From positions 62,001 to 126,000 of the forward strand of contig NIVC01000312.1 in assembly GCA_002269645.1 (NCBI GenBank): a DNA stretch of 64,000 bases. The letters run 5' to 3'. The stretch's first letter is position 1, and every line of letters begins with the position of its first letter. Shown here piece after piece: positions 1-20,200 of this stretch. Under the pieces are notes generated by a model. It was not told the DNA's origin. It saw only the letters and a list, made by a program, of their open reading frames with translations, and ran no database searches. Source of the DNA: Macrostomum lignano. Its lineage: Eukaryota. A program made the translations under genes and the position numbers.

Positions 1-770
1 CGAAGTTTCATTGTAAGCTTGAAGTTCATTGTAAGCTCGAAGTTTCATTTTAAGCTCGAAGTTTCATTGTAAGCTCGAAGTTTCATTGTAAGCTTGAAGT
101 TCATTGTAAGCTCGAAGTTTCATTGTAAGCTCGAATATTCATTGCAAGCTCGAAGATTCATTGTAAGCTCGAAGTTTCATTGTAAGCTCGAATATTCACT
201 GCAAGCTCGAAGATTCATTGTAAGCTCGAAGTTTCATTGTAAGCTCGAAGTTTCATTGTAAGCTCGAAGTTTCATTGTAAGCTCGAATATTCATTGCAAG
301 CTCGAAGATTCATTGTAAGCTCGAAGTTTCATTGTAAGCTCGAAGTTTCATTGTAAGCTCGAATATTCATTGCAAGCTCGAAGATTCATTGTAAGCTCGA
401 ATATTCATTGCAAGCTCGAAGATTCATTGTAAGCTCGAAGTTTCATTGTAAGCTCGAATATTCACTGCAAGCTCGAAGATTCATTGTAAGCTCGAAGTTT
501 CATTGTAAGCTCGAAGTTTCATTGTAAGCTCGAAGTTTCATTGTAAGCTCGAAGTTTCATTGTAAGCTCGAAGTTTCATTGTAAGTTCGAAGTTTCATTG
601 TAATCTCAAAGATTCATTGTAAGCTCGAATATTCATTGCAAGCTCGAAGATTCATTGCAAGCTCGAAGTTTCATTGTAAGCTCGAAGTTTCATTGTAAGC
701 TCGAAGTTTCATTGTAAACCCGAAAATTCACTGTAAACCCGAAAATTCACTGTAAACCCGAAAAGTCACT
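1..770. repeat. 19-bp minisatellite (CTCGAAGTTTCATTGTAAG)n, intronic
   Basis: Period of 19 read directly; degenerates from about 715; lies upstream of the MSP-domain exon. Confidence 0.95.
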
Positions 771-798
771 GTAAACTATTTTATCAACATCAACAAAG

Positions 799-3700
799 AC
801 CGTCTTCAACGCCGCCGAGTCAGCCGCCGGCTCGCTCTGACAAGCTGCAGCTGCTGGCGGCGCCAGTTGAATCTGGCCTGTCGCGCGAGGCCTGCCAGGA
901 GGCGTTGAAGTCCGCTCCGTCCGAGGCGCTGATGGAACACCGGCTCCGCTGTCGGGTTGAGACGCCGAAACCGGCTGCTGGGTCGGCAGCGGCGGCGTCT
1001 GGACGACTGCCAGATGACCAGCAGTTGGCCGCTCTGCGCTCCGAGGTAAGCGAGCCGTCGGGTTCGACAGAATAATGAGGACTTTGCTGTGGCACATGCT
1101 TATAACCGTTGATGCTGAACTACTGCAATAACTGCATGAATATCCAGTACTGATTACAGACACTACTTAAGAGATCATGTTACTGAAACCGCATGAATTG
1201 AAAGTTTGCAGAAATATTTTTACGGACACTATTGCAGACACTGCTACAGACACAGCTGCAGACACAGCTAGAGACAGCTGCAGATACAGCTGCAGACACA
1301 GCTGCAGACACAGCTGCAGATACAGCTGCAGACACAGCTGCAGACACAGCTGCAGATACAGCTGCAGACACAGATGCAGACACTGCTACAGACACTGCTA
1401 CAGACACAGATGCAGACACAGCTGCAGACACTGCTACAGACACTGCTACAGACACAGATGCAGACACAGATGCAGACACAGCTGCAGACACTGCTACAGA
1501 CACTGCTACAGACACTGCTACAGACACAGATGCAGACACAGCTGCAGACACTGCTACAGACACAGCTACCCGCCAAACTTAATTCGTCCGATTTTTTGCT
1601 TTTAGCACCGGTATCTTGATCCGGTTTATTGTCCGGAATCGGCCCATATCCACAGTGTAAAGAAACCGGAACAGAGCCGGACAAAAAGTTACGTTTCAGG
1701 ACCAGGCGTTCAGATTTTATCGCCTTTGCCCTGTTTTATGTCCGGTGATTATTCCGAAGTTTGTTCCGGTGCCTGATCCGGTCAAAGAGAGCCGGATGTT
1801 GCGCCGGTTTTGTTCCGGTGCCTGATCCGGTCAAAGAGAGCCGGATGTTGCGCCGGTTGCTGGACCGTGGCATTGACCGATCCAAATGGGATCGAGACCG
1901 GACCGAAAGCCGGACCGGCCCGGTTTAATCTTGAACCGTTCTCTCCGGAGCAGGAGGCAGTCTTCCACGCGAATAGAAAATGAAAAGAAAATTGAAGAGT
2001 TTAAACTGAAGTACTTTTTTTTTCAATCCAGGCATTTGTCAACCTTTCCATTTCCATGGCAATTTATTTTTACTTCCGAAACATCGAAAGCACCGAACAT
2101 CGCAAATCACACATGGTCCCTTACAAATGCGTCGCTTCCCTTCTGGCGCTCACAAATGAGTCATAAAGGTGATAAAGGTGATAAAGGACGTTCAATTGGC
2201 CGAACCAACCGTCAAACCGCAAGCTTCAGCAAGTCAACGAGGCTACCGGCCGACTGCAAATCGTCCATGCTCGTGACGAGGTTAGCCGTCGTCACTGAAG
2301 CCGCCAACGTATCCGTAGCCGCAGTCGTAGTCGCAGGCGAAGGGTAAATGAGAACCGGATGGTTCTCATCAGGCTCCTCCATGACGACAACGATGGCATG
2401 GGAGTCTGTCGTCGAGGAGGCCTTCTTCGGCCTCTTGGTAGCGCTTGGCCTCGGGCCGCTCGATCCGGGCCTCGGGCCGGTGATACGGCGGCACTTCAGT
2501 TTCGGCAGACCCTGGCGAACGCGTGCCGTCTCGCGGCAACGCGAGAAAGCGCGTTGTAGTTGGCGCTTAGTGGCGATGACGCCAACGGTCTGCAGCCACT
2601 GCTTAGCGATAAGCAGTTTGGCTGGGTTAGCGGCAGCAGTCAGCCGGTCCCCCAGCTTTCGGCCCGAGAAATTTGCGCCTGAAAACTCCGTCTCAGAGAA
2701 CAGTGCCCGCAAGAGACACCGCAACAGCGACGAATGTTCCGAACGCAGTATTGCGGCGTAGTCCGGACGCTCTTCGTCGATGTCCACATGTGGCTGGCCA
2801 GCCTTTTCTTTGGCCTGCAAATATGTACGGAGATGAGCTTCCAGTATAGAACGGCTCCCGACCTTGACAAATATATTCGGTTGGCGGTCCGACAGTGCGA
2901 CGCGCCCACCGCTATTACTAGCACCGGCCGAGTTTTCAGCGCTGCAGGCAGTCATTATCGCGTGGGTGTCGCTGGCAGACAAGGCAGCGTCAGCGACGAA
3001 GCGTTTGGCCGAGAAATCACTATCGTCCGCGCTATCACAGCTCATGCGTGTTTCGTCGTCGCTGTGACCAGCGACGTGTGTGCTAGTATCAGCATTGGTG
3101 GACAAATTGTCCGGGTCGGCAACAAGCATAGTGGACGCCCTGATCAGGAATGCGTTGCATGATTGCGCCCTGTTTTGCATCTGCCGAATGACGTTGTCCT
3201 TGCGACGAATCTCACGCTCAAGGCTGCTCTCGCGCAGCGCCAAATAGGAGGTTCGCTCCTTCGCGTCGTCCAGACGCCGGCGCAGCTCCACTTCGGCAGC
3301 CGACTTGTCTCGTATCTCGCCTCCTGTCAGTGGAGACAAAAGTTAATGTTACTCCGATCAATCATACATTCCCCAGAACATTCAACACTTACTTAGTGTC
3401 TCCACTAAGATGTCCGCCTTGCGACTTTCCAGTAGCAGGCTTCGACAGGACGCGCAGCCTCGAGGTGGCTCTCTGGTCGGGGCGTGCACATTCGTGAGGC
3501 GACAAGAAGCCGTCGCTTCTTCACGACTTTCGAAGGGCCCACGGATGAGAGTGCCGATCCACCGACGGGCAGTTTTCCTATTACTTTTGGCCACTTTAAT
3601 GGCAACAACACTCCCAACAGAAACTGGGATGGGTCCGTCGCTGCGGCGCTGCACAATATTCTCCGTAGTGGAGACAACGTCCGTGCGTTCCCGGGATTCG

Positions 3701-6700
3701 TCATAGCGCATGATGAAGAAGCGCTCGGTAGGCTCTTGCTTGTACGGGAGCATATCGGATCCTTCTTTCGACGGGTTGCCACCGTCCCGGTTGACTCGCC
3801 TGCCACGTGTGTCTCGATCGCCAGAATCAGTAGCTGAGCACCCCGCCTCATGGGCGAAGCAATCGTCTGCGTCTGCACCATTGGGCGTCGGATTTGCGGT
3901 TGGCGGCTTAGGTATGGTCGTCTGGACAGCATCGATCACGGGTGTTAGCGTGTCACTGCCAGCTGGTAGATTACCATTCGCAGCTGGCTGATCGTCCTTC
4001 GGCTTCGCCTTCGCCTTCTTCAGAGATCTTGGAGCTTTAGACTTCGAAGCAGTACTAGCCGCAGCGGCGGGAGCTGCGGGAGCGGCAGCTTTTTTTCCGC
4101 TTGCGAAGCAGGTCGCCTTGCCCATTTAAAGACTGTAAGACATGGAGCAGGTTTTGAAATTAGGTAATTCCACGTAGAGATGACAAAACTCACGAGTAAG
4201 AAAAGTGTGTTCGCCTGCTTCTACGAAGAGACATGCAAATCGTTGTTTTTATTGGCATTTCGTCTGTAGCTCCCAGCTCTTCTCCAGATCCAGACTCCAT
4301 CATGCAGTCAAAAAGGTGGTAACGAAGAATAACATTAAAAACATACCTCCCCTGTTTACTCCCATGCAGAATTACATGGATGCTGCCACAAGAAAATTAA
4401 GTAGGTATATGTGCACATGTGTAGTTCGCTTAAGAATCAAACAACAACAATCAAACAATAGAGCAAGTTTTTTCTATTGCGCAAATCGAAATTACCGTGT
4501 CAATGCCTACACTGAGTAACATACTAACGTCCCTCACTAACTAACTCACTCACTAACCTGGAGTCAGTCACGCCTTCGAGAGGATCAAAAAGTCGGGATC
4601 TAAAAAAGTGTGGCTTTTAGTATGCTGCCCAGTATATCAGTCCAATCAATTCTTTCCGTGGGCCTTCTTCTCCTGCTGGAGCTCACGCAGATCCCTTAGT
4701 GGCCGTCTGCGGCGGCGTAGCGGTCGCATTGCCGCCACAGGTGCTTCCGGCGGAGTCTCGGGCATGTCAATCGCCCAGAACTGACGTGGATCCGCAATGG
4801 GTTTCGGTTGGTTCGACCGGTGTTTGCCGGCCTGCTGCAGTCGTCTTTGGCGGCTTTCTGGAGACAGGTTAGAATACCACGACTCGCAGTCCGGACAGCA
4901 GTGCGCCTGCAATTCTAGCCTGTCGGCTTTGCGCCTGCATGGGAAGACGCACGCCGGTCTCGAAGTCCTCTCCGGCAACAGGTTGTAATCAGCGCGGATT
5001 TGAGAAGACGACATGCCGGCATACAGGCCTGCAAAGAGACTGACCCGGCGGCTGGGTTCCGGTGCCGGCTCTGCGGCGGGTGGTACGTGGTACATGTCAG
5101 GGCCCTGCGTCTCAGAACCCTCCTCGTCGTCGTAGTTGAACCTGTCGACTGCCTCGGGTTCCGGTGCCGGCTCTGCGGCGGGTGGTACGTGGTACATGTC
5201 AGGGCCCTGCGTCTCAGAACCCTCCTCGTCGTCGTAGTTGAACCTGTCGACTGCCTCGGGTTCCGGTGCCGGCTCTGCGGCGGGTGGTACGTGGTACATG
5301 TCAGGGCCCTGCGTCTCAGAACCCTCCTCGTCGTCGTAGTTGAACCTGTCGACTGCCTCGGGTTCCGGTGCCGGCTCTGCGGCGGGTGGTACGTGGTACA
5401 TGTCAGGGCCCTGCGTCTCAGAACCCTCCTCGTCGTCGTAGTTGAACCTGTCGACTGCCTCGGGTTCCGGTGCCGGCTCTGCGGCGGGTGGTACGTGGTA
5501 CATGTCAGGGCCCTGCGTCTCAGAACCCTCCTCGTCGTCGTAGTTGAACCTGTCGACTGCCTCATCGGCGGGTTCCTCATTCGATGCCGCCACGGGTTTC
5601 GCTAGCACAAGTGGAGTCGAATCGAAAGGCCACATCGACTGCAACACTTGCGTACTAGGAATGTCATCTAATGCGACGATGGCCCTATGCGCCCGCACCA
5701 TGGACCCCGTGTTAAAAACTGGCGACGTGGGACGTGAACGGCCGAGTCGAAGGAGCTCAGAACGGAGCAAACGGTTCTCCTCTGTGAGGGCGCGGCAGAT
5801 GGGACAGCTGGCTGCGTGTGACCAGTGGTCCATCGCTGTAAAATTGGGGTAATCGTTATGGCGCTGAAGCGCGTTACCGTTCGAAATTCACAGCTATTCA
5901 ACATACTGTGTATGCAGCATACTATACTGTACTACAACTAATAGAGGTGCTGGAACTAGTCGTACAGTAACTATAACGATACAAATACAGATCACAGCAG
6001 AAACTGTCGCTGAGTTTGATTTCGACGTGAACGAGTATGTCCGATGACATCCTAGATGCTATAGTCATTGTACAAACGGAAGCAGAAGACAACAGAAAGG
6101 CAATGTGTTTTAACTCCTTTAGTTTTCGTCTCGTTTATTTCAATACCTACCTTAATTATATACCTTAGTGTTACATAGAACGGAAGAATTGAAACTATAA
6201 CTTTCATTTTTTAGGCGAAGAAACACATCATCACATTGTCTTAACTTCGAGCAATGAAGACATAACAAACGCTTGTACTGCTGTTCTCGTTGAGACAGTC
6301 TGACTGGAGCAAAATAGGTGTACATTTTTGGGTGGGCGTGACAGGAATTGGATATGTATTGTTTAGCCTCGGACCACTTAGTCATCTTAGCCAGTAGTTA
6401 GCGACAAAACAAAGCACCGAAGCATCCGAGTGGATCAATGATATGACAACTGTGGGTGAGGCAACAGTGCGATGTGGCTCTCGGAAAGGACACACGAACC
6501 GATGACATCCTCAAGCGGTAGTAGTAGCGGATCTCCGTAGTCCGCCAAATCGCCGAATGGATCGGCTGCAAGCCGCCGCACGTGAGCGCAACGGCAGCCA
6601 CGCCTAGCGGAATTGCCACGTACAGCACATAGTGCCTCTAACGGGTCCTGATCTGGTTCGCGGACCGGTAGAATTAGGACCCGAAGTGGCACTTGTGCAC

Positions 6701-9700
6701 CGGTACTACTAATGGCTTCAACTCGTGCAAAACGAAATGTCGTCGGACGAAACCCGGAAATTGCAACGAAACACGATGCTACAGTGCGGCGCAGTGGGCG
6801 GTTATCGTTTTGTCGGCTGATGAAAACTACAATGACCAGCCCTGAGGGCAGTGTCGCACTGCGCCACCCATCCAGCATGCCATGCGGTCGTCGAAGAACT
6901 ATGGAGTTACGGAGAACGATTTCCGTGCGCCGATGGCTCCGTTGTCGCCTCTCCAAGCCCTCAGCACCTAGCAGACGCGCTCCAATCTGGTTGGCGGCTA
7001 TCTGTCTCTCCACTGACGTAACCACGTCAGCCTCGTTGTTGCTCGAGCCATGAAGGAGCTGTTGTAATCGTTTGTGCATGGTTTCGAACAACCCAGTTGA
7101 TTGATGATGTATCGGCCCACCGGAGTCTACAGCGCTCAGCATGTGGCAGCAAACTTGATGGGCGTTGTACGTAAGCGCCCGAGTGGAATATAAGCGCGGT
7201 AAATTTGCGAGGAAGCATCTGAGGGACACCTCGACGTGGTCCAGTTCGTCCTTTGGCCCACCTTCAAGTCCCATCCAAAACACAGCCGTTGATAGAACTA
7301 GTAAATGGTTGTAGTGGTCCGGCGGCAGAAAATCACCCAGAACGAGCGGAGCGAACACTAAAATCCACATTTCTAGTTCGTGTCCACGAAGATGGCGCAG
7401 GTCCTTCAGCTTCCTAACACTGTGGCGTTGCACTGATCGTGGCACGAGAATGCGATTGAGACGCTCGCCGACATCGCCAAGTCTGGGGTGCAGGTCCGGA
7501 CAGTTAGTGTCTGCACGGTCTGGCTTCTCATTGCGGATTGCGAACATCTGTAGCAATATCCGACGAACGAGCCCGCCGCACAACTGGTGCAAATAACAGG
7601 GCGGACAACCTTTTATAAAATCAAAGCCAGGCAGCCTGCTTAGAGGAGAGTGTCCGTACACACCGAGTACGTCGCGGCAAGTACCACCGCCGTTGCTCAC
7701 ATGTAGATCGGCAAGGTGCGAAGTGTCAGCAGCATTACGCACTGTTGTCTGTGTACAGCCTAGCATAGCAGGAGCGTTCAACATGGCGGGTGTAGCTTCG
7801 ACGTGAAAAAGTCGCCCGCCGCCTTGCAAGTAACCGGTCCGCAGATAGCATTTGTCGCAGTATTTTCCGGAAAAGCGACGCATGCATAGAGCGTCCGCCC
7901 TCGCCGGGGCGTCCATCATCCCAAGGAGGGGATGGAGGCGCAGGACGCAAGTCTCGCCGTTGGCGTTGTTGTACGTTACACCTATGGTACGCAGGCTGGA
8001 CAAGACGTTTACCATAACAGGCAGAAATGCGGCGGCCTTGACTTTTTGCTTGCCAGCCCACACTCCTGCGATGAAAACGTATCGCAGTTTAACTCGGTCG
8101 TGTACCTCTACGATGGAAATGTAGAATGGGCACACTTCGACGCAGCTAGTACTGAACCGAGGAAAACCATCGAAGCAGAAAACGTACGACAGATCGGCTC
8201 GGCGCTGTACATCGATGACCTCCAGAAAGTCTCGGTACAACGAGCTGTTGTACACGTGCAAAACGTCCGGCTGCACGTCGCGGTCAGCAGGCCAAACGAC
8301 GTTGTCAAGAAGTCCACCGCTCTCGATAGACTGTCGGATCTGCTGACGCACGTCGAATGCGTAAAAGTTGGCCACAGATTCTTCGCCGCAGTGTGCACAG
8401 ACGTCACCATCGGAAACGTGCCGAAAACGAGTGCGACGCATGCAGCTATTGCAAACGGCGTTGCAAACCGTCGAACCAATCGCTGACTGCGCTGAGCTGA
8501 CGCACGACTCCAGACTTCGTCTTGTTCGCGGTAGACTACAGCCTGGCATAAGGCGATGAAGCAGCGCCATCAGTTTGTCGACTACATGATGCTTCATGTG
8601 CGTCTCTATGACGAACAGCATAATGTCTGACGCAGCCTGGCCCAGCGTTCCCGGAAGCGCTGGATGGAACGGCTGATGCAGTTGTGCATCCGGTACCGGC
8701 AGCGGTGCGTCTTCGTCGCTGTCAAAGTCGCCTTTGATCGAAAATGAAACGAATGAAATGACTTTAGAGGGAGGTGTATATGCATCTGCATCGCAATATG
8801 CAATTATAATGTATGTGACATTACTTACTGTCACCGACATCTGAGAAGCTACTACCAGAGTCAGATGAGGATGCGACATCAACGCTCTCACGATTAGTCT
8901 CGTTGTCTGCAGATGCAGACTCACTGTTACAGTCGTCCGCAGGTTCGGTATTGTCACTGTCAGCCGATGGGTCGACCTGATCACAGCATGCTTGTTGACC
9001 AGATGTGCCACCGTCACTGTCACCAGGAGCAGGATCAACAGTAACAGCATCACTGTCATCGTCACTGCTAACAGCGCCGTTAGAAGCTGCACTTGCAGCG
9101 TCAGCGTCAGCTGACGTGCCAGCGCCGCGTTTCTCCACGGGGGATCGCGATCAGGCTGGAGTTGCCGCATTTAACTTTCTTCGAAACCGGTATGCCCGCA
9201 TGTACAACCGCCTGTGCAGCCTTTTTTCATCGTCCTCCATACGTCTAGGCAGCTGAGGGCGGGGTATTACTGATTCATTAGCACGCGTACATGTCGAAGG
9301 AACAGAATCTACGAGTAAATGAGCTATAAGTTTATAAACTTATCTAGCGGTTTGACTTCTGTGACAAACTTAGACTTAGACTTTGACCTAATTTAAAATA
9401 CTTCTTAGCTATTTCTTGTAGGACCTATGTAGGATATAATGGCCCTGCAGATTTAATGGCCCTGAAAATATAATAGGACGCGACTCTTAGCCAAGAAAGA
9501 AAGAAAGAAAAATTTAGGGTTGCTGGATTTTGGATAACGGATGTACGACGTATGGCATAAATAATACAGGAAAGAAAGAACAAGTGCGATAAACAAATTG
9601 AACCAAAACAGAAGACGTTTCCACTACATCTTCAGTAACGCATCAATTTATTTGACAAACGAACTCCCCAACATCTGCGAGGTTGTATTACCCCTCTCGC

Positions 9701-11145
9701 TGCTAGCCGCAGTTATCTCAGCAGATCGACTTACGTTAACGTAAGCCTCGACTCTCTTGTAAATTTACAAGAGAGTCGAGGCTTCTTCAACCCTCCTCCT
9801 TTTGCAACCGGGCTTGGGACCGGCTTTGCGGAGTTAAAGACAGCCAGTGTTTCCTACACTCAGCTGCTTCATTTTCTGGAAGCATCGGTACTTCCAGCCA
9901 GAAGCAGCCGAAGAAGAAGCCCATTTTTAGCGGGATAGCAATTATAGCCATTATTAAACCAGCTTTCCGAACCGGAATATTGTCCGTTGCGTACCGGTGA
10001 AACGACGGCTCGGCGCCCAGTCGAAATAACGGGCGAAAATCCGGTACAGAAATGACGCATTACCCCTCCTGCACCGGTTTTTCGTCACGCTCAAAACGGA
10101 TGCTCACATAACAAACAAGCGGACAATATTCCGGACGAATAACCGGCGCTCATTGTTCCGGATTTGTCCGATTCTTAGAATTTATTGGACCGGTCTTTGT
10201 CCGGTTTTGTTCTGCTCCGGTTTCGTCCGGTTGTGGTCCGAAAACAAGCTCTTTTCCGGCACAATCCGGGTGAAGGAGTATAAATTTCGGATCTAAATCC
10301 GGCTGCAGAGTTTGGCGGGTACAGACACAGCTGCAGACACAGCTGCAGACACAGCTGCAGACACAGCTGCAGACACTGTTACAGACACAGCTACAGACAC
10401 AGCTGCAGACACAGCTGCAGACACAGCTGCAGATACAGCTGCAGATACAGCTGCAGACACAGCTAGAGACACAGCTGCAGATACAGCTACAGACACAGCT
10501 GCAGATACAGCTGCAGACACAGCTGCAGACACTGCTACAGACACTATTGCAGACACAGCTACAGACACTGTTACAGACACAGCTGCAGACACAGCTGCAG
10601 ACACAGCTGCAGACACAGCTACAGACACAGCTGCAGACACAGCTGCAGACACAGCTGCAGATACAGCTGCAGACACAGCTAGAGACACAGCTGCAGATAC
10701 AGCTGCAGACACAGCTGCAGACACAGCTGCAGATACAGCTGCAGACACAGCTGCAGATACAGCTGCAGATACAGCTGCAGACACAGCTAGAGACAGCTGC
10801 AGATACAGCTGCAGACACAGCTGCAGATACAGCTGCAGACACAGCTAGAGACACAGCTGCAGATACAGCTGCAGATACAGCTGCAGACACAGCTAGAGAC
10901 AGTGCTACAGACACCACTCCAGACCCCCAAATCCTCGTACGCCCTCCCCCCGGCAGGTGAGCCGTCTGTCTGGCATGGTCAGCCGCCTAGCGGTGCAGCA
11001 GTCGCAGCGCCTGGCCTACACCAAGTACAGCCTGTGGCTGCTGGCCTTTGGAGTCATTTTCCTGGCCTTTCTATTGGGCTGGAGCTGCGGCCGGCAGGCC
11101 GCCTCATCAAGTCATGCAGGCCCGCCTCACTCTACAGATCTGTGA
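799..11145 (+). CDS. MOSPD2: MSP-domain tail-anchored ER protein, MOSPD2-like (3' part only; exons ~799-1045 and 10957-11145)
   Basis: The + frame at 782-1045 reads ...DKLQLLAAPVESGLSREACQEALKSAPSEALMEHRLRCRVE...LAALRSE, resembling the MSP-domain end of MOSPD2 (MEHRLRC). The phase-0 donor GAG|gtaagc (1045/1046) joins the acceptor cag|GTG (10956/10957), giving VSRLSGMVSRL...YSLWLLAFGVIFLAFLLGW, a short coiled coil plus C-terminal TM. The exon start at 799 is tentative. Confidence 0.7.
1225..1568. repeat. 12-bp minisatellite (GCAGACACAGCT)n, left half of an array split by the transposon
   Basis: Period 12; same unit resumes at 10320. Confidence 0.95.
1761..1858. repeat. 49-bp direct duplication in the CCGG-rich subterminal region
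   Basis: TTGTTCCGGTGCCTGATCCGGTCAAAGAGAGCCGGATGTTGCGCCGGTT occurs at 1761 and 1810. Confidence 0.9.
2212..4125 (-). CDS. Transposon accessory protein with coiled coil and BEN-like domain; exons 4125-3393 and 3323-2212
   Basis: A 69-bp GT-AG intron (3392-3324, gtaagt...ctgacag, phase 1) joins ORFs 3382..4125 and 2212..3339 in frame. LLRCLLRALFSETEFSGANFSG...NPAKLLIAKQWL fits the BEN-domain pattern and follows a heptad-rich segment. Confidence 0.75.
4646..5833 (-). CDS. RBBP8-like: Compact CtIP/Ctp1/Sae2 (RBBP8)-like protein carried by the transposon
   Basis: The C-terminus RRKADRLELQAHCCPDCESWYSNLSPESRQRRLQQAGKHR...DPRQFWAIDMPET aligns almost without gaps to remembered human CtIP [40 protein letters not shown]...TPENFWEVGFPST. 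The N-terminal CPICRALTEE plus coiled coil resembles CtIP CDRCAVTEE. Confidence 0.85.
   Translation of the reverse strand: MDHWSHAASCPICRALTEENRLLRSELLRLGRSRPTSPVFNTGSMVRAHRAIVALDDIPSTQVLQSMWPFDSTPLVLAKPVAASNEEPADEAVDRFNYDDEEGSETQGPDMYHVPPAAEPAPEPEAVDRFNYDDEEGSETQGPDMYHVPPAAEPAPEPEAVDRFNYDDEEGSETQGPDMYHVPPAAEPAPEPEAVDRFNYDDEEGSETQGPDMYHVPPAAEPAPEPEAVDRFNYDDEEGSETQGPDMYHVPPAAEPAPEPSRRVSLFAGLYAGMSSSQIRADYNLLPERTSRPACVFPCRRKADRLELQAHCCPDCESWYSNLSPESRQRRLQQAGKHRSNQPKPIADPRQFWAIDMPETPPEAPVAAMRPLRRRRRPLRDLRELQQEKKAHGKN
5054..5563 (-). repeat. Five identical 102-bp in-frame coding repeats (34 aa EAVDRFNYDDEEGSETQGPDMYHVPPAAEPAPEP)
   Basis: Period 102 verified (5054 vs 5156); 510 bp total. Confidence 0.95.
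6152..6385 (-). CDS. Small Cys/His-containing ORF of unknown function (77 aa)
   Basis: ATG directly follows ctaag, with a CTAAC branch-like motif upstream and AATAAA downstream (6139-6134). Contains CHAH and CLHC. No family recognised. Confidence 0.4.
   Translation of the reverse strand: MTKWSEAKQYISNSCHAHPKMYTYFAPVRLSQREQQYKRLLCLHCSKLRQCDDVFLRLKNESYSFNSSVLCNTKVYN
6435..9240 (-). CDS. EnSpm/CACTA-type DDE transposase; predicted exons 9240-8829 (in-frame TGA at 9153-9151) and 8731-6435
   Basis: Motifs CFDGFPRF, MMDAPAR...CDKC, YLH, HQVCCH and GLFE match the D, D, CxxC, [M/L]H, H(3-4)H, E signature of CMC transposases. A 97-bp GT-AG phase-1 intron (8828-8732) links an acidic N-terminal exon in frame. 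Confidence 0.9.
9730..9784. other. Overlapping perfect palindromes (16 bp, 9730-9745; 42 bp, 9743-9784)
   Basis: CTTACGTTAACGTAAG and AAGCCTCGACTCTCTTGTAAATTTACAAGAGAGTCGAGGCTT each equal their reverse complement. Confidence 0.95.
10320..10915. repeat. 12-bp minisatellite (GCAGACACAGCT)n, right half
   Basis: Same unit as 1225-1568. Confidence 0.95.
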
Positions 11146-11589: not shown

Positions 11590-12010
11590 GTCTTCTCCCG
11601 TCTTCCCCTCTGTCTTCCTTTCAGCCTTCCCCCGTCTTCCCCTCTGCCTTCCCCTCTGCCTTCCCCTCTGGATTCCCCTCCGTCTTTCTCTATGGCTTTC
11701 CCTCTGCCTTCCCCTGTCTTTCCCTTCTTGCTTTCACTCTGCCTTCCCTTCTGCCTTGCCCTCTGGCTTCCCCTCCGTCTTCCCCTTTGTCTTCCCCTCT
11801 GCCTTCCCCTCTGTCTTCCCCCGTCTTTTCCTTTGGCTTCCCCTCCGTCTTCCCCTTTGTCTTCCCCTCTGCCTTCCCCTCTGTCTTCCCCCGTCTTTTC
11901 CTTTGGCTTCCCCTCCGTCTTCTCTGCCTTCCCCCGTCTTCTCCTCTGTCTTCCTCTCTGCCCTTCTCTCTGCCTTTCCCTCTATCACCCCCTCCATCTT
12001 CCCCTCTCAC
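11590..12010. repeat. Pyrimidine-rich degenerate repeat (TCTTCCCCTCTG-like)
   Basis: Recurrent CTTCCCC motif; the + strand is almost all C/T. Confidence 0.85.
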
Positions 12011-12689
12011 ACCACACTAATATTTAATTATTTTTCTTTTGAAAATTTGCTTTTTAAGCAACAACTTCAAGCCAAAAAATTTTTTCCCTAAAGAACGAGT
12101 TTTATTATTCCATTTTTTGTAGATAAAAATGCGACTGGTCCTACTGACTTATTGATTTGCAGTACGAGTAGAGTGATGAACGAATATTTTTTCCATAATC
12201 TTTAATCGATGCAATAGCACTAAAAGTTTCTTCAGTAAAACAAACATAGATTTGGATTATTTTTGCAGCCTTTAATTTCCTGCCAGCGCTCTGTTACTCG
12301 TGCCCTAGTAGTGAAGCTTGTGTCACACTTCCTTTTCTACTCAAAGATTTTATAATGCTTTGCAAATTTTGCATGCAAAAATTGAATTAAGTTTGATTTG
12401 GTTCAGAATAAAAGTGCTCTTCAATTATTTATCCTTACAGTGTTGTCTTTCATTCTTTGTTTTTCTTTTTTTCAAATTGGAAAAGTTGTTTTTTAACTAG
12501 AACAAGTAAGCTAATCCCCTTTGTCGAAAATTTTTTTTCTGAAAAATTCCTGTTTTGAAAAAAATTTCCCTTCTTGAAAATTCCTCAGGTCAAAAATTCC
12601 CTTTGTCAAAATTCACTTTGAAATTTCTTCTAGAAAATTACCCTTCGTAGAACTACCTTTCGATAATATTCCTCTAACTAAAGAATTTC

Positions 12690-12980
12690 CCTTCATAAGA
12701 TTCCCCTATCTAAAAAATTCCTCTTTGATAAGATTTCCCTCTCTAAAGACTTCCCCTTTGATAAGATTCCCCTCTCTAAAGACTTCCCCTTTGATAAGAT
12801 TCCCCTCTCTAAAGACTTCCCCTTTGATAAGATTCCCTCTCTAAAGAATTCCCCTTTGGTAAGATTCCCCTCTCTAAAGAATTCCACTCTCTAAAGAATT
12901 CCCCTTTGGTAAGATTCCCCTCTGTAAAGAATTCCCCTCTCTAAAAATTCCCCTTTGGTAAGATTCCCCTCTAAAGAATT
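12690..12980. repeat. 33-bp minisatellite (AAGATTCCCCTCTCTAAAGACTTCCCCTTTGAT)n
   Basis: Period 33 (12728 vs 12761). Confidence 0.9.
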
Positions 12981-13029
12981 CCCCATTTCACTGGCAGTCC
13001 TAAACAACCAGTCGCACCTGGCAACTCTG

Positions 13030-16000
13030 ATGGCGGAAACGAAGCTGATGCTGGCGCCTTTGCCGTCGCCCTCACCGTCGTCAAATATGTCAAAGACGGC
13101 AGCGGCGGCGGTCAAGCCTAAGAATCGGCGAAAACGCGAGAGCGAGTTCGCTAGCGACACCGACACTGACAGCGACGCCGACGGATCTACAGTCGACTTG
13201 AGCGTCGGCGAATTCGCCAAACTCGGCCGCGCAATGCAGGAACTGCGCGCAATCCACGCCGCTCTTCGTCGGCAACGTCGGCAACTTCGCACTCGCGAGG
13301 CGGCCCTAGCGGCCCGCGAATCGGCCGCCGTGGCGGAGGCCGAGGCCGCCGCCGTTTCCGCCGCTCGTGCCGAGGCCGACGAGCGGGCCCGACTGGAGCT
13401 CCGGCTGCTCGCCTCCGAGGAGGCTGGCGCGTCGGCTCGACGCGAATGCGCCCGACTGCGCGACGCGTTCAAATCGGCTCGGGAATCGTCTGCGCAGCTG
13501 CGGCGCCAACTGGCCGAGGCCGAAGCCGAGCGCGACCGACTGGCGCGGGCCGAGCGCTCGCATCGCGCCCGATTGGCAAATCTTGGCGCCGATAATTCCA
13601 GCGCGATATCGTCATCGCCGTCGGCGGCGGCTCCTCCTTCCGCTAGGCGTCGATGCTGCGTCGATGCGGCCGGATCGAGCGGCGTCGATGTCGGAGTGCA
13701 GACTCCGGCCAAGTGGATGGCCGCCGCTGTCGCCGCTGCCGAGGCTGAGGCTGCGGCGCCCGCGGCTACGGCTGCCCTACAACTGGCCGAGGTGACTTGG
13801 CTGTGAATGTGGCATTTAATTGGTGAATGTGTTGTTTCTGTTGGTGAATGAAAGTGTGTGAGTTGGTGAATACAGTGTTTGAGTTGGTGAATGCAGTGTT
13901 TGAGTTGGTGAATGCAGTGTTTGAGTTGGTGAATGCAGTGTTTGAATTGGTAAATGCAGTGTTTGAATTGGTGAATGCAGTGTTTGAGTTTGTGAATGCC
14001 GTATTTCAGTTGGTGAATGCAGTGTTTGAGTTGGTGAATGCAGCATTTGAATTGGTGAATGCAGTGTTTGAGATTGTGAATGCCGTATTTCAGTTGGTGA
14101 ATGCAGTGTTTGAGTTGGTGAATGCCGTGTTTGAGTTGGTGAATGCAGTGTTTGAGTTGGTGAATGCCGTGTTTGAGTTTGTGAATGCAGTGTTTGAGTT
14201 TGTGAATGCCGTGTTTGAGTTGGTGAATGCAGTGTTTGAGTTGGTGAATGCAGCATTTGAATTGGTGAATGCAGTGTTTGAGTTTGTGAATGCCGTGTTT
14301 GAGTTGGTGAATGCAGTGTTTGAGTTGTTGAATGCAGCATTTGAATTGGTGAATGCAGTGTTTGAGTTTGTTAATGCCGTGTTTCAGTTGGTGAATGCAG
14401 TGTTTGAGTTTGTGAATGCCGTGTTTGAGTTGGTGAATGCCGTGTTTGAGTTGGTGAATGCAGTGTTTGAGTTGGTGAATACAGTGTTTGAGTTGGTGAA
14501 TGCAGTGTTTGAGTTGGTGAATGCAGTGTTTGAATTGGTGAATGCAGTGTTTGAGTTTGTGAATGCCGTGTTTCAGTTGGTGAATGCAGTGTTTGAGTTG
14601 GTGAATGCAGCATTTGAATTGGTGAATGCAGTGTTTGAGTTGGTGAATGCCGTATTTCAGTTGGTGAATGCAGTGTTTGAGTTGGTGAATGCCGTGTTTG
14701 AGTTTGTGAATGCAGTGTTTGAGTTGGTGAATGCCGTGTTTGAGTTTGTGAATGCAGTGTTTGAGTTTGTGAATGCCGTGTTTGAGTTTGTGAATGCCGT
14801 GTTTGAGTTGGTGAATGCAGTGTTTGAGTTGGTGAATGCAGCATTTGAATTGGTGAATGCAGTGTTTGAGTTTGTGAATGCCGTGTTTGAGTTGGTGAAT
14901 GCAGTGTTTGAGTTGGTGAATGCTGTGTTTGAGTTAGTGAATGCAGCATTTGAATTGGTGAATGCAGTGTTTGAGTTTGTGAATGCCGTGTTTGAGTTGG
15001 TGAATGCAGTGTTTGAGTTGGTGAATGCTGTGTTTGAGTTGGTGAATGCTGTGTTTGAGTTGGTGAATGCAGCATTTGAATTGGTGAATGCAGTGTTTGA
15101 GTTTGTGAATGCCGTGTTTGAGTTTGTGTCAAATGCAGTTTTATTCGGCGAAAACATAAACCTTAAAACTTGAATGTTTATTCACTTTAAATATCAAATA
15201 ATTTGCTTGGTTAGTGATCTTTTTCCCCGTCAAAAAAAGTGCTTCATCCAAATTCGCCCTCAGTCCCTGATCTCCTGGGACAACTCTGTCGGTCGCCTGG
15301 CCTGGTCGCCAATTCCGAGTTCGCCATCGACGCCAACGCCTTCGCCGCGGCCTGTAGACGCCGAAGCCGCACTGCGCTGCATGCCGCCTCTTGTCGAGTT
15401 GCTCCAGCAGCGGCTCGGCTCGCCATCGACTCGACAGCGCAGTCAGAAGACGCATTCGGTAACCTTAGCAACAGCCTCGGCCAGTCTCCGCTTTCTTCAT
15501 CGCCTGCTGTCCACTGCTGAGCTGGGTGGCGCCGGACAGCGAGTCAGCGGCGCCGCCTGCGTTCGCCAACTGGCCGAATCGCTGGCCCAGCGCCTGCTGC
15601 CTCGTCGGGATCGAGTGGAGTGCGACCAGCTGCTGCTGCTGGCCTGTCTGCTGATTCTGCGCGCGTCGATTGGCGACTTTGAAGCCCGACAGCGGGCGGT
15701 CGAAGCGCTGCGGAAACGGCTGCTGGAGTCCAGGGAGGCCCGGCGCGTTGCCGTCAGGTATGCCTGTCCTGTGCTTGTCCGTTGTTCGTCCGGTGTCTGT
15801 CTGGTGTCTGTCCGGTGTTCGTCCGGTGCCTGTCCGGTGCTTGTCCGGTGTTCGTCCGGTGTCTGTCCGGTGCTTGTCCGGTGTTCGTCCGGTGCCTGTC
15901 CGGTGCCTGTCCGGTGTTCGTCTGGTGTCTGTCTGGTGTCTGTCCGGTGCCTGTCCAGTGCCTGTCGGTTTCTATCCGGTGCCTGTCCGGTGCCTGTCGG

Positions 16001-17222
16001 TTTCTGTCCGGTGTTTGTCTGGTGTCTGTCCGGTGCCTGTCTGGTGTCTGTCGGGTGTCTGTCCGGTGTCTGTCCGGTGTCTGTCGGTGTCTGTCCGGTG
16101 ATTGTCCGGTGCCTGTCCGGTGCCTGTCGGTGTCTGTCCGGTGTCTGTCCGGTGTCTGTCTGGTGCCTGCCCGGTGCCTGTCCGGTGCCTGTCGGTGTCT
16201 GTCCGGTGTCTTTCCTGTGTCTGTCCGGTATCTGTCCGGTATCTGTCCGGTGTATGTCTGGTGTCTTGTTGGATTGTCTCTCCCGTGTCTTTCCCCTGTC
16301 AGTCCCGTGGCTTTCCTGTGTCTATGCCGTGTCTGCCCAATGTGTTTCCGGAGTCTGTCGGTGTCTGTCCAGTTTCTGTCCAACGTAGGTCAATCCCGAT
16401 GTCTGTCCGTTGTTTTTACGGTGTCTTTTCAGTGTCTAGTATTTTTTCCGGTATTTTCTGATGTTTGCCCATTGCCTGTCCGGTGTCCGGTGTCCGGTGT
16501 CGTTTTGGTGTCTGCCGGATATCTGATTGTAGTGTCTGTCCGGCGTTTGGTTTGGTTTGGCTTGCCTGGTTCTTATCGAATGTCAAAGTGCAGTTACATC
16601 ATTGTATATCTATTTTTTCACATTTGAAATGATTTATTTGGCTGGCTCACAGCTAACACAGATTTCATCTCTAAACAATCCCTAAACCCACAGATCCCTA
16701 GACGGCGGTCACTGGCTGCTGCTGGCGGTCCTGCAGTCGGCGGAGGCGCCCGCTCACCACTGGCCCGCTGCTCACCAGCGCGCCCTGCTGGACGCGGCGC
16801 TCTGTCTGGCCTGCGACGCCGAGTTTGGCGCCGAATTTTTGCGCCAACTCGTCGACGGAAGAATTGACAACGGCGTCGACGGTGGCGGCGACACGGCGAC
16901 ACGCCTGGCTGTCGGGCTGCTTCGCGTCGGCGCCGGCGTCGACCGCGGCGTCCAAGAGCGCGCCGCTGTTCTACTGCAAAAAGCGCGCCGATACGTTGGC
17001 GCCAGTAGGCGCCATAATCGGCGCCATTTTCTTGCGCCGGCGGCCGCCGCGGAAGCGCGTCGACTGCTGGCTGGCGTCGGACCAGATGACGACTTTTTGG
17101 CTGTCAATCTTAGGGCAATTCTGCGCCCCGGCGGTGCCGAAGCTGATGAAGAAGAGGAGTTTGCGAGTGTCCGGGGCGACGCCAACTCGGACGAGGGGCA
17201 AGGGGGAGACTTGTCCGGTTGA
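13030..17222 (+). CDS. CCDC138: Coiled-coil domain-containing protein 138-like; exons 13030-13791, 15264-15757, 16694-17222
   Basis: GT-AG junctions are phase-consistent (0, then 2). The protein has an N-terminal coiled coil. C-terminal ERAAVLLQKARR and DDFLAVNLRAIL resemble remembered CCDC138 EKLSIILQKLSK and HAFLCINLNSTL. Confidence 0.7.
13816..15130. repeat. 21-bp minisatellite (GTTGGTGAATGCAGTGTTTGA)n in CCDC138 intron 1
   Basis: Period 21; explains the VFELVNA/TAFTNSN pseudo-ORFs. Confidence 0.95.
15760..16500. repeat. Degenerate GTCCGGTG(T/C)CT repeat in CCDC138 intron 2
   Basis: Recurrent TGTCCGGTG core starting right after the donor at 15758. Confidence 0.85.
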
Positions 17223-20200
17223 TTGACACTTTGGACCGATTGGTGGCCATTTAGGCATTCTAGGTTCGAATTCATCAGTTAAACGGCGCAAAATCAAATG
17301 AAATAGCAGCATCTCTAGCCTACGCGTTTACACTGCTGAGCCTCTAAAATTTTAATAACCATGCAACACCACTATTTGCTATCCGACTTCTTAATAGACT
17401 GAATTTACCAGTTAGAACACAAAAAGTTTATTTAATTTTCGATGCCTCTTGTTTAAAATTGTTGTACTACGAGTATTCTCTTCCATTCCATATCATTAAT
17501 ATTCGAGCTACTTGTCTGTTTCACGTGAGTACTGTCCTAGTACGCTCGTATGTGTACATGTACATTCCCTATAAGTAGTTTTTTTCTTCAGAATTTATAT
17601 TATGTTACAAAGCTGTGCTTAATTGATAAATAAACATTAGCTGTCGTTTTACAAGTAAAATCATCAGTTGATTGGGGATTTATTAAATGCAAATGCAGTA
17701 GTGCTACAAGAATACTTGTGGTCAGTAGTATGGAACATATTGATTGCAGCAAATCGTTGTTGCCAAAATTTATTACTGACAGTGCTATCACTGTCAGGCA
17801 TCACAAATGCGTAGAAACGTAATATTTAATGAAATAGTTAAATAACAATACCAAGAATGAAGTTATTCACCCTTTACTCTATTTGGATAGCTTTCTTTAA
17901 CGAGCCTGCATCGTACATGTACTGTATATATATATTGTATATCCAATTATTGTAATTATACGAAGTTGTTACCGACGAGGTCGTCGTAGAATTGGTTTAA
18001 AAAGCCGGTTGCAAGATAGAACAGGATTCCATGCTTCTTATAGACATTTAATGATTAAAGAGATTCGTTCAATCAAGTCAAGATTGTTCAGATGAAAAAA
18101 AAAAACAGATTCCATTACCGAAAAGCAGATTTGTATAAAACTATTTTTATTGGACAAAAGTCATACATTATATATTCAAATAAAAAATTTTGTTTTGCAC
18201 ATCAGAATTTATAATTTTATGTCCAATTCAGCACAGAAGCAATAATTTTTTTAGACTACATGATTTCTACGTTTTAGGCGCTATTTTGAAATTTCGTATT
18301 GAGGTCGGGGGGGGGGTTAAGAAAAAACACGGGGTTGGTCGCCGGGTTTAATCTGTCGTTCCAGCCGGTTTCGCGTTTCAAACAACTTAAACGAAGATCT
18401 CGGCTTGCAGATGACGGGGAGCTCCGCTGCTGAGTTCCTCAGGCTCAGGGGGAGGGTAGCTGTGGTCGCGGCTGAGTGGTCTAGTTTTGCCGACATTCAG
18501 AATGCCGAATACAGTGATATGTAGCCGAAAAAAGGGAACTTCAAAATAAGCTAAATTTGTCAAGAGTCTTACTAATAGTAGTAGGTCGCTGCCATTACCG
18601 CGATTGTACGCAGGAAAAGCTCTAAAGCTTGAAGCTAGCTTGAGTTCGCTCTAGCGCTTCTCTGTAGACCTCTAAGGGTCAAATAACGCTTCCGAGGTCA
18701 CGAAGGCTAAGACACCGTTTCACACACACTATAAACTGGGCCGGAATAATTAGTGGCCAATTGAGCTAGATGAAATTGTTATTATTGAAACGAAATAGGT
18801 TACACACTGCAATCAAAGTTACTAAAATCAGTTATTAACCGTTAACTCGATGGGCGAGGAGTTGGTCGGGTCGGGATGCTGGGCTTACACATAGGGGCCT
18901 CTCGTAATGGGCTGTAAATAGAGTCAAGGAAGGCGGGCGCGATTCTTGGGCACGGGGCCACGAGAAGGGGCAAAAACCACGAGAGCGGGCAAAACCACGA
19001 GAGTCTGGTTGGGAAAGGCGGGTGCAGACTCTTAAATGGGCTCTCATGAACCACCGGGAGGAAAAGGGTTACCCCGGGGGGGACAGGAGGAGCACCGGGT
19101 GGAACAGGGGAGGATAGACCGGATGGTGATGATTAACACCGGGTGGACCCTAACGCAAAAAAACGTAGCAAAACAAAATTACGGTGAGTGGGAAGGGAGT
19201 TACATCGCCTGGGAAACGAAATGACGTCAGAGTGACGCTGAATTCACCGCATAAGAAAACAAACACTCGGTGCGGAAAAGTCTTGCACGCGGTGAAGAGA
19301 AGTGGGAGGCCTCGCCTACCACAGTATTATGCGTGTGCAAAATTTACCCGAAATATAGGCCTACTAAACTAAACTAATTCTTCGGTGGTTGTACTTCGTC
19401 AGCCGCGTCACAATATTTTGCTACCTCTAAGCACGAAACAACGCAGCAAAATGCTGCTAACAGCACGCTGGCAATGCAGGCTCTGCATGCTGTTTATAAG
19501 CAAAGTGAAAAGTACGAGGCTAAACAAAAATAACTGCACAAAAAATTCTAACCTCTTTTTAACAAGTTTGTAAAGCTTAATTTGCTGGCGTAGGTCTATT
19601 AATAAATCTATAATTGAGAATAGAGTCAATGTAGGCCCGCCCCTACGCTAGGCTTAAAGCAGGCACCCGATGAGAATCACCCGACTATCCTTCCTACATC
19701 AGTCTTCGTAATCGTAAGGTAGCATACATGAAATAATAGTAGGCTTAGGCCTAAGCAGAAAATATCTTGCTATGGCTAGTGCCTATGCCTGATGTTGTAT
19801 GATTTTGACTGTGATTGTGAATCATGATTATGATTATGGCAACACTGTCAGTAATGCAGAAACAAGGAAAAATTTTATTGCACGTGAAAACAAAAGTAGG
19901 GCCTAGTCAATTGAAATTTTGTCAAATGGCTCTTTCATATTTTTCTAGCTTCTGTTTTACTTTATTGTGTATTTAAGTACCTACCTAGTACCTAGGCCCC
20001 CTACTATATTTATTATAAGCTATAAAAATAACATAATAGGCCCCTAAGCAAGTTATTTTTAGTATGTTCTTTTGTTGGGTCCTGGCCTAGCCCTAGCCTT
20101 AAAGGCTTAACCGTTGAGTGATTTTACTTCACTTTTTTAATGCATAGGCCTAGACCCTTACAATGTTATATTTTTCATATTTATTAAAAAAATTTATAAG

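What the first reader, a model, noticed from the sequence alone, without database searches (positions are those of the whole stretch)
4750..4800. Natural phosphomimic: Asp at the position of the CtIP CDK site T847
Seen: codon GAT at 4792-4790 gives D-P-R-Q-F-W-A-I-D-M-P-E-T-P, register-matched to human T847-P-E-N-F-W-E-V-G-F-P-S-T859-Q (recalled from memory). The T859-equivalent Thr is kept but followed by Pro, so a TQ site becomes a TP site. Known: CDK phosphorylation of T847 (Sae2 S267) licenses resection in S/G2, and an acidic substitution partly bypasses that control. Inference: the transposon protein could be a constitutively licensed CtIP that uncouples resection from the cell cycle.
Basis: partly seen in the sequence, partly recalled or inferred. 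Interest (0 to 1): 0.85.

Follow-up and report, generated by a model that had tools for sequence, protein, structure and literature searches.

The report
Transposon CtIP-like gene with acidic CDK-site
A structurally complete 8.75-kb cut-and-paste DNA transposon carries, next to its transposase, a short relative of the DNA-break resection factor CtIP/Sae2 in which the residue that cells normally phosphorylate to allow resection is a fixed aspartate; it is plausible but untested that this frees the protein from cell-cycle control.

Summary
Codon GAT at 4792-4790 (- strand) is Asp348 of an intact 395-aa ORF (4646-5833). Its C-terminus matches Pfam PF08573 (SAE2/CtIP C-terminus) above the curated cut-off. 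Scans of native fragments place Asp348 at profile position 96 and Thr360 at 108, with no gap between them. That is 12 residues apart, like S267/T279 in Sae2 and T847/T859 in CtIP, and 8 profile positions after the RHR arginine, like R839 to T847. A CxxC lies 22 residues before the His, as in human CtIP.

The "transposon" claim is also right. The ORF sits in an 8751-bp element (1569-10319) with perfect 11-bp inverted ends and a TA duplication. The element splits a 12-nt minisatellite whose phase continues across it. It encodes a CACTA/Mirage/Chapaev-type transposase.

The functional inference stays untested. Related elements (L001, L003) keep the transposase and two accessory genes but have no CtIP-like gene. 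Only one copy of this gene was available, and neither host CtIP nor host Rad50 could be reached. Thr360-Pro may retain proline-directed kinase control. No human CtIP sequence came back from any search, so residue mapping rests on Pfam coordinates plus published residue numbers. Interest is moderate to high; I class it as a new variant of a known kind.

The parts
1569..10319 (-). Whole DNA transposon, 8751 bp. All four long ORFs are on the - strand.
   Evidence: A perfect 11-bp inverted pair sits exactly at the edges of an interrupted 12-nt minisatellite. The phase of the array is continuous once the element plus 2 bp are subtracted. No stop or frameshift was detected in any of the four ORFs.
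1569..1579 (+). Left terminal inverted repeat, CCCGCCAAACT.
   Evidence: The exact 11-mer occurs once on each strand in 64 kb.
10309..10319 (-). Right terminal inverted repeat, the reverse complement of the left one.
1567..1568 (.). TA target-site duplication, left copy.
10320..10321 (.). TA target-site duplication, right copy.
1233..1567 (.). Left half of the host 12-nt minisatellite into which the element inserted.
10322..10914 (.). Right half of the same 12-nt minisatellite.
1600..1960 (.). CCGG-rich subterminal repeat region, including a 49-bp unit present twice. Bounds are approximate.
   Evidence: A like region is present in the relative L001.
9970..10300 (.). CCGG-rich subterminal repeat region at the other end. 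Bounds are approximate.
6435..9170 (-). Transposase ORF, 911 aa, of the CACTA/Mirage/Chapaev (CMC) type.
   Evidence: It has 3194 homologues, and 28 of 40 aligned homologues hit Pfam Transposase_21. Conserved residues are D334, D420, C438-x2-C441, H671-x4-H676 and E696, which is the CMC signature described in PMC12730594. The core aligns to P0001 in one unbroken frame. The N-terminal start is not resolved.
4646..5833 (-). CtIP/Sae2-like ORF, 395 aa, intact.
   Evidence: GC3 is 0.68 against 0.40 GC in the flanking spacers.
5054..5563 (-). Five perfect 102-bp (34-codon) tandem repeats inside the ORF. Each unit is acidic and contains one T-Q.
4817..4897 (-). C313-x2-C316 to K337-H338-R339: counterpart of the CtIP 'CxxC...RHR' (C-rich-H) region.
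   Evidence: The spacing of 22 residues from the second Cys to the His equals human C816 to H838. The motif is defined.
4754..4852 (-). Stretch matched by Pfam PF08573, residues 328-360 against profile positions 77-108.
4787..4792 (-). Asp348-Pro349, at the column of the CDK site (Sae2 S267, CtIP T847).
4751..4756 (-). Thr360-Pro361, at the column of the PI3KK site (Sae2 T279, CtIP T859). The Thr is kept but is followed by Pro.
3382..4125 (-). Accessory ORF3, 247 aa, function unknown. It is conserved next to the transposase in relatives.
   Evidence: BLASTP E 1e-14 to L001 7509-8234. tblastn hit in L003. No Pfam hit.
2212..3339 (-). Accessory ORF4, 375 aa, function unknown. It is conserved in L001.
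   Evidence: BLASTP E 3e-15 to L001 8575-9339. No Pfam hit.

Best explanation
The ORF is a lineage-specific accessory gene of a CMC-type (Mirage/Chapaev-like, TA-duplicating) DNA transposon, and it encodes a compact CtIP/Sae2-family protein.

Shown: the protein keeps the C-terminal module that, in CtIP and Sae2, docks on Rad50 and Mre11. That module comprises the CxxC...(K)HR region followed by the loop that carries the CDK site and the PI3KK site. The CDK-site residue is Asp, still followed by Pro, so this loop carries a permanent negative charge where the cellular proteins need phosphorylation.

Inferred: the Asp partly substitutes for the phosphate that bridges Rad50 R77/R79 and Mre11 R187. 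The protein could then co-activate the host Mre11-Rad50 nuclease without CDK action at that site. For a cut-and-paste element this would push the breaks made by its transposase towards resection-dependent repair. Copying from the sister or homologue restores the donor copy, and any blocked or hairpin ends would also be processed.

The Thr-Pro at the second site and the T-Q in each of the five acidic repeats suggest that kinase control is rewired rather than simply removed.
For: - Family membership: PF08573 scores above its gathering threshold, and the CxxC-to-His spacing is identical to human CtIP.
- Register: D348 = profile 96 and T360 = profile 108, gapless, which agrees with the 12-residue spacing and the RHR+8 distance in the literature.
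- Element context: TIRs, TA duplication, phase-continuous minisatellite, CMC signature transposase, and accessory genes syntenic with L001 and L003.
- Coding quality: an intact 395-aa ORF with GC3 of 0.68 between AT-richer spacers.
- Published function of the site: S267E and T847E retain activity and partly bypass CDK, and the phosphate is modelled as a salt bridge.
- Precedent for a natural CDK-independent variant at this column: S. pombe Ctp1 I283 paired with Rad50 L77.
- Precedent for transposons carrying a cargo enzyme gene: TET/JBP in fungal elements.
Against: - Only one copy of the gene was seen. It has no relative in 5.8 billion protein clusters, in JGI metagenome contigs or in IMG/VR, so conservation of the ORF and of Asp348 could not be measured.
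- The complete relative L001, and also L003, lack the gene. None of 27 long homologous gene models contains a SAE2 domain. The transposon family therefore does not need it.
- The Pfam match covers only 33 residues. The counterpart of human C835 is Ala, and RHR is KHR.
- Phosphomimics are only partial substitutes, and Asp is shorter than Glu.
- T360-P, S37-P, T73-P and S324-P could still impose CDK control.
- Host Rad50, Mre11 and CtIP are unknown.
- The five 100%-identical repeats show very recent change or an assembly effect.
- The AF2 model was uninformative, with pLDDT 51.6.
Confidence: 0.4

Rival explanations
1. Passenger gene without function. The element captured a copy of a CtIP-family gene, as Pack-type CACTA elements capture host fragments. 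The ORF is drifting, and Asp348 is one of many neutral replacements.
For: The gene is absent from the related elements L001 and L003. It is single-copy in the window, and no homologue was found anywhere. The third zinc-ligand Cys is lost and RHR is KHR. The perfect 5x repeat signals instability. An acidic residue is about a 10% outcome by composition.
Against: The 395-aa frame is open, with its own ATG and stop and with coding-type GC3. The residues that define the loop (Pro at +1, F-W, Thr at +12), the CxxC and the His are all retained at the right spacings. The element itself looks young, with perfect TIRs and an intact TSD.
Confidence: 0.3
2. Control is moved, not lost. The acidic residue fixes one contact, but proline-directed phosphorylation of Thr360-Pro (and S37, T73, S324) still gates activity. 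Alternatively, the interface has co-varied with the host Rad50, as in S. pombe, so Asp348 says nothing about cell-cycle independence.
For: T360 is followed by Pro and three further S/T-P sites exist. T859 phosphorylation also promotes MRN stimulation, with T859A falling from 43-fold to 15-fold. Huertas and Jackson conclude that other CDK targets are needed for full resection. The Ctp1 I283 / Rad50 L77 co-variation shows that this column tracks the partner.
Against: T-P-P-E is only a minimal CDK motif, with no basic residue at +3. There are no data on the host kinases or on host Rad50.
Confidence: 0.15
3. Decoy or inhibitor. A short CtIP-like protein with a permanently charged docking loop occupies the Rad50 site and blocks host CtIP, in the way the Rif2 MIN and TRF2 iDDR motifs block it. 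This would suppress resection and favour end joining of the excision site.
For: The same Rad50 surface is used by inhibitors that exclude CtIP/Sae2/Ctp1 (bioRxiv 10.1101/2023.03.25.534200). The protein is short, no CtIP-type N-terminal oligomerisation domain was detected, and it has lost one zinc ligand.
Against: It keeps the CxxC...HR region, which in models anchors CtIP to Mre11 for activation. CtIP homologues of under 200 aa are functional in Paramecium. There is no direct evidence either way.
Confidence: 0.1
4. Not a CtIP relative at all. The 33-residue Pfam match is a chance resemblance in a fast-evolving transposon protein.
For: The match is short and only 2 to 6 bits above the cut-off. 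There were no hits in PDB or in the protein database.
Against: E is 2.5e-5 against all of Pfam. CxxC lies at exactly the human spacing from the His, outside the scored stretch. The 12-residue spacing of the two site columns, with Pro after the first, also fits.
Confidence: 0.05

Closest known systems
CtIP (RBBP8) / Sae2 / Com1 family, Pfam PF08573
   Same: The C-terminal module is shared: a CxxC 22 residues before a His-Arg, then a loop with a Pro-followed site, an F-W pair, and a Thr 12 residues further on. The profile match is above the gathering score.
   Different: The CDK-site residue is Asp rather than Ser/Thr. The second site is T-P rather than T-Q. RHR is KHR, and the counterpart of C835 is Ala. 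The protein is 395 aa and has five perfect acidic 34-residue repeats. It is encoded without introns inside a transposon. Human CtIP itself was not recovered by any search.
S. pombe Ctp1
   Same: It is a natural family member that lacks the phosphorylatable CDK-site residue and stimulates Mre11 without CDK phosphorylation at that position.
   Different: Ctp1 has a hydrophobic Ile283 paired with Leu77 in Rad50, which is an apolar solution. The residue here is acidic, which would fit a basic partner. Ctp1 is a host gene, not a transposon gene.
Engineered phosphomimics CtIP-T847E and Sae2-S267E
   Same: An acidic side chain at the same column. They keep activity and permit some resection after CDK inhibition.
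   Different: Those are laboratory Glu substitutions in otherwise normal proteins. Here a natural Asp sits in a divergent protein of unknown activity.
CMC/CMCT DNA transposons (EnSpm/CACTA, Mirage, Chapaev; Pfam Transposase_21)
   Same: [quoted passage not shown] The element has short TIRs, a 2-bp TSD within the 2-5 bp range, subterminal repeats, and multi-gene organisation.
   Different: The termini read 5'-CC..GG-3' rather than the usual CA..TG. The window's own transposase does not reach Pfam significance. It carries a CtIP-like cargo gene, which I found described in no paper.
Fungal DNA transposons carrying TET/JBP dioxygenase genes
   Same: These are cut-and-paste elements that carry an extra gene acting on DNA or chromatin, acquired independently in some lineages only (PMC12730594).
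   Different: The cargo is different, a resection co-factor rather than a demethylase. The host is different, and so far only one element is known.

Membership tests
SAE2/CtIP (PF08573) | Match to the family profile at or above the curated gathering score. | tested here: met
   The whole ORF scores 21.7 bits and the C-terminal 134 aa score 25.7 bits, against a cut-off of 19.8.
SAE2/CtIP (PF08573) | 'CxxC...RHR' C-rich-H motif (human C813, C816, C835, H838, R839). | tested here: inconclusive
   C313-x2-C316 and H338-R339 are present at the human spacing. The first Arg is Lys, and the C835 counterpart is Ala335. Extra residues C295, C299, H311 and C312 lie upstream.
SAE2/CtIP (PF08573) | Ser/Thr-Pro CDK site just downstream of RHR (S267 / T847). 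| tested here: not met
   Asp348-Pro349 lies at profile position 96. This is the finding itself. S. pombe Ctp1 also fails this feature and is still a member.
SAE2/CtIP (PF08573) | Ser/Thr-Gln PI3KK site 12 residues after the CDK site (T279 / T859). | tested here: not met
   Thr360 is at +12 (profile 108) but is followed by Pro.
SAE2/CtIP (PF08573) | N-terminal coiled-coil oligomerisation domain. | tested here: inconclusive
   Residues 1-90 give no PDB or Pfam hit. A short heptad-like stretch is visible by eye only.
SAE2/CtIP (PF08573) | Direct sequence hit to a named CtIP, Sae2 or Ctp1 protein. | tested here: not met
   There were no hits in PDB or in the protein database. The protein I had in mind is human CtIP (RBBP8).
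SAE2/CtIP (PF08573) | Stimulates the Mre11-Rad50 endonuclease. | not testable with these tools
   No functional data are available.
CMC (EnSpm/CACTA-Mirage-Chapaev) DNA transposon | [quoted passage not shown] | tested here: met
   Invariant or nearly invariant D334, D420, C438, C441, H671, H676 and E696 in a 40-sequence alignment. The motif is defined in PMC12730594.
CMC (EnSpm/CACTA-Mirage-Chapaev) DNA transposon | Pfam Transposase_21 (tnp2). | tested here: inconclusive
   The window protein gives no hit, but 28 of its 40 aligned homologues do. Homology to them reaches E 1e-36 and better.
CMC (EnSpm/CACTA-Mirage-Chapaev) DNA transposon | Terminal inverted repeats and a 2-5 bp target-site duplication. 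| tested here: met
   Perfect 11-bp TIRs and a TA duplication. The minisatellite phase is continuous across the insertion.
CMC (EnSpm/CACTA-Mirage-Chapaev) DNA transposon | Termini 5'-CA..TG-3' (true in most, not all, members). | tested here: not met
   The termini are 5'-CC..GG-3' here and in the relative L001.

The most novel reading that the evidence does not exclude
A cut-and-paste transposon has recruited a CtIP-family co-factor and fixed a negative charge at its CDK switch. The element would then bring its own cell-cycle-independent licence for Mre11-Rad50 end processing to the breaks it makes, steering donor-site repair towards copying from a template and so gaining copies. This would be a natural counterpart of the laboratory T847E/S267E alleles.
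Probability: 0.2. Interest if true: 0.85.

Novelty: new variant of a known kind. Interest (0 to 1): 0.58.

Why it matters
The CDK site of CtIP/Sae2 is the textbook switch that restricts resection, and hence homologous recombination, to S/G2. In 2009 the only homologue known to lack it was S. pombe Ctp1.

A natural acidic residue at that column, in a gene carried by a mobile element, would be two things. It would be an evolutionary experiment on that switch. It would also be the first case I could find of a transposon encoding a resection co-factor.

If conserved among copies, it would link transposon fitness directly to repair-pathway choice at the donor site. If it proves to be a one-off captured gene, it is still a clean example of cargo capture by an animal CMC element, with exact boundaries.

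Tried and rejected
- Word-indexed protein searches with the whole ORF, with its C-terminal 134 aa and with the transposase found nothing.
- Exact-product look-ups of the two ORFs are not on record.
- PDB sequence searches with the whole ORF, the N-terminus and the C-terminus gave no hit at E up to 10.
- Scans of JGI metagenome contigs and of IMG/VR, with the CtIP-like domain and with a transposase alignment, found nothing.
- phmmer and a motif regular expression over all six-frame ORFs of loci L001-L007 found no second CtIP-like ORF.
- A Pfam scan of 27 long homologous gene models found no SAE2 domain.
- The AF2 single-sequence model of the C-terminal domain had pLDDT 51.6 and was not used.
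- Spacers flanking the ORF share no duplicated sequence that would show how it was acquired.
- A weak Pfam alignment of residues 299-332 to profile 6-40 (12 bits, E 0.48) was rejected as mis-registered. It disagrees with the human CxxC-to-His spacing.
- The match of Asp356 to Sae2 D275 (+8) was dropped as evidence, because D275 is conserved only in Saccharomycetaceae.
- Rfam and tRNA scans of the window were empty.
- No text supplement with a CtIP alignment was available.
- The organism could not be identified beyond 'nearest named transposase relatives are from Macrostomum lignano'.
Full report
**1. The observation**

On the - strand, window 4792-4751 reads D-P-R-Q-F-W-A-I-D-M-P-E-T-P. GAT 4792-4790 is Asp348 of an uninterrupted 395-aa ORF, 4646-5833. 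Thr360 (4756-4754) is followed by Pro361.

**2. Is it a CtIP relative, and is Asp348 at the CDK-site column?**

The ORF hits a single Pfam family, PF08573 'DNA endonuclease activator SAE2/CtIP C-terminus'. The whole protein scores 21.7 bits. The last 134 residues alone score 25.7 bits (E 2.5e-5, residues 328-360 against profile 77-108 of 110). The curated cut-off is 19.8.

No search returned human CtIP or any other named family member:
- PDB gave no hit at E up to 10.
- The 5.8-billion-cluster protein database gave nothing for the whole ORF or for its C-terminal domain.

Instead I mapped the register by scanning unaltered sub-fragments of the ORF against the Pfam profile. Residues 347-360 align to positions 95-108 with no gap, so Asp348 = 96 and Thr360 = 108. 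His338-Arg339 align to 87-88, and one extra residue lies between 339 and 347.

Published residue numbers then tie these columns to the known sites:
- The CDK and PI3KK sites are 12 residues apart in both Sae2 (S267, T279) and CtIP (T847, T859) (PMC10706839).
- R839 belongs to that motif, and H838 belongs to the zinc motif C813/C816/C835/H838 (PMC11317151). R839 to T847 is therefore 8 residues, equal to profile positions 88 to 96.

One feature outside the stretch scored by Pfam agrees independently. C313-x2-C316 lies 22 residues before His338, exactly as C816 lies before H838.

Departures from the human pattern are K-H-R for RHR and Ala335 at the C835 position.

I conclude that Asp348-Pro349 occupies the CDK-site column and that Thr360-Pro361 occupies the PI3KK-site column. 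One acidic residue is not statistically striking by itself, since D+E make up 10% of this domain. What gives it weight is that the rest of the docking loop is kept.

**3. The surroundings: a complete transposon**

The ORF is one of four long ORFs on the - strand: 6435-9170, 4646-5833, 3382-4125 and 2212-3339.

The 911-aa ORF has 3194 homologues in the exhaustive search:
- The best is an unnamed protein from a Tara Oceans marine metagenome contig, at 50% identity.
- The nearest named ones are multi-copy Macrostomum lignano proteins at 35-38% identity.
- 28 of 40 aligned homologues hit Pfam Transposase_21 (tnp2).
- The alignment conserves D334, D420, C438-x2-C441, H671-x4-H676 and E696. This is the DDE triad with C(2)C and H(3-4)H that defines the EnSpm/CACTA-Mirage-Chapaev group (PMC12730594).

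The element's ends are exact:
- CCCGCCAAACT at 1569-1579 and its reverse complement at 10309-10319 are each unique in 64 kb.
- They are flanked by TA on both sides.
- They are embedded in a 12-nt minisatellite (1233-1567 and 10322-10914) whose repeat phase is continuous once the 8751-bp element plus 2 bp are subtracted.
- CCGG-rich subterminal repeats lie inside both ends.

I detected no stop or frameshift in any of the four ORFs. The conserved transposase core aligns to its best relative in a single frame. Whether the transposase N-terminus is complete is not resolved.

**4. Is the CtIP-like gene a family trait?**

It is not, as far as could be tested.

Contig L001 holds a complete relative at 97-10043. 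It has 33-nt inverted ends that also start CCCGC and the same kind of CCGG-rich subterminal repeats. It carries the transposase followed by homologues of ORF3 (E 1e-14) and ORF4 (E 3e-15). About 1 kb without a long ORF lies where the window has the CtIP-like gene.

In L003 the ORF3 homologue follows the transposase within about 170 bp.

Further negatives:
- phmmer and a motif search over all six-frame ORFs of seven loci found no second CtIP-like sequence.
- None of 27 long homologous gene models has a SAE2 domain.
- Within the window the gene is single-copy.

The gene is therefore a lineage-specific addition, placed between two conserved element genes and flanked by AT-richer spacers of about 0.5 kb. 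Nothing in those spacers shows how it arrived.

**5. Other features of the protein**

- Five 100%-identical 102-bp repeats (5054-5563) encode an acidic 34-residue unit. Each unit contains one T-Q.
- S/T-P sites occur at S37, T73, S324 and T360.
- The single-sequence AF2 model is of low confidence (pLDDT 51.6). It shows only two short helices between CxxC and KHR and a disordered site loop. I do not use it as evidence.

**6. How it most likely works**

Established knowledge:
- Phosphorylated S267/T847 is modelled as sitting between Rad50 R77/R79 and Mre11 R187, where it stabilises the cutting state. S267E keeps part of the activity.
- T847E supports resection even after CDK inhibition, though less extensively (PMC2666608).
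- S. pombe Ctp1 shows that this column can change naturally, with a matching change in Rad50 (I283 / L77), to give CDK-independent stimulation.

Inference: Asp348 supplies a fixed negative charge at this contact. The element's protein could then engage host Mre11-Rad50 without CDK action at this site. That would favour resection-dependent repair of transposase-made breaks, which for a cut-and-paste element can restore the donor copy.

This is the best-supported reading, but I give it only about 0.4. The rivals are:
- a drifting captured gene (0.3);
- control moved to Thr360-Pro or co-variation with host Rad50 (0.15);
- a decoy that blocks host CtIP on Rad50, by analogy with the MIN and iDDR motifs (0.1);
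- a spurious family assignment (0.05).

**7. Comparison with what is known, and novelty**

The protein works like, and by profile belongs to, the CtIP/Sae2 family, but it fails the two phosphosite features (see the membership table). The element belongs to the CMC group by its transposase signature, TIRs and TSD, although its termini are CC..GG rather than CA..TG.

Transposons that carry cargo enzymes are known, for example TET/JBP in fungi. I found no paper describing a transposon-borne CtIP/Sae2 homologue, or a natural acidic residue at this site.

I rate it a new variant of a known kind, with interest about 0.58. It would rise sharply if other copies show the ORF and Asp348 under purifying selection while host CtIP keeps T/S-P. 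It would fall if the host's CtIP also has D/E, or if this copy is unique.

Noticed in passing
window 1-755; 12656-12984; 13820-15128; 15764-16381; 11600-12007: The window is unusually rich in minisatellites: 19-nt x40, 33-nt x10, 21-nt x62, 11/22/33-nt arrays and a 12-nt CT-rich array. They generate many spurious long ORFs.
   Followed up: partly
window 41667-42044 and 42468-43094 (+); 46179-47012 (+); 47816-48451 (+); 58063-58482 and 58907-59317 (+): Host-type spliced genes are present: 3-hydroxyanthranilate dioxygenase exons, GatB_N, a Guanylate_cyc_2/Peptidase_C39-like segment, and sideroflexin exons. They show that the window is ordinary eukaryotic chromosomal DNA.
   Followed up: partly
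window 60933-63710 (-): A 925-aa ORF is built from long near-identical tandem repeats, with up to 96% self-similarity at shifted offsets. It is probably a satellite rather than a gene.
   Followed up: no
window 9743-9784: A perfect 42-nt palindrome (21+21, no spacer) lies inside the element, upstream of the transposase ORF.
   Followed up: no
L001 97-10043: This is a complete related element in a Tara Oceans marine metagenome contig. It has 33-nt TIRs starting CCCGC, CCGG-rich subterminal repeats, and three conserved genes, but no CtIP-like gene. No matching target-site duplication is visible at its ends.
   Followed up: partly
L005 10700-13186 and 21832-24342: Two tandem copies of a related transposase lie in a Macrostomum lignano contig. 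The M. lignano cluster has at least 12 members, some fused in gene models to C2H2 or other domains.
   Followed up: no
window 20000-38000: An AT-rich block (GC 0.31-0.41) contrasts with about 0.5 GC elsewhere.
   Followed up: no
window 2212-3339 (-), residues about 200-275: The block of ORF4 that is conserved with L001 looks BEN-domain-like to my eye. This is from memory only, and Pfam gives no hit.
   Followed up: partly
window 8821-9260 (-): Upstream of and overlapping the start of the transposase ORF, other reading frames encode a basic stretch and an acidic Ser/Asp-rich stretch. These resemble the N-terminus of the L001 transposase only weakly (E 0.35). Whether this reflects upstream exons was not resolved.
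   Followed up: partly
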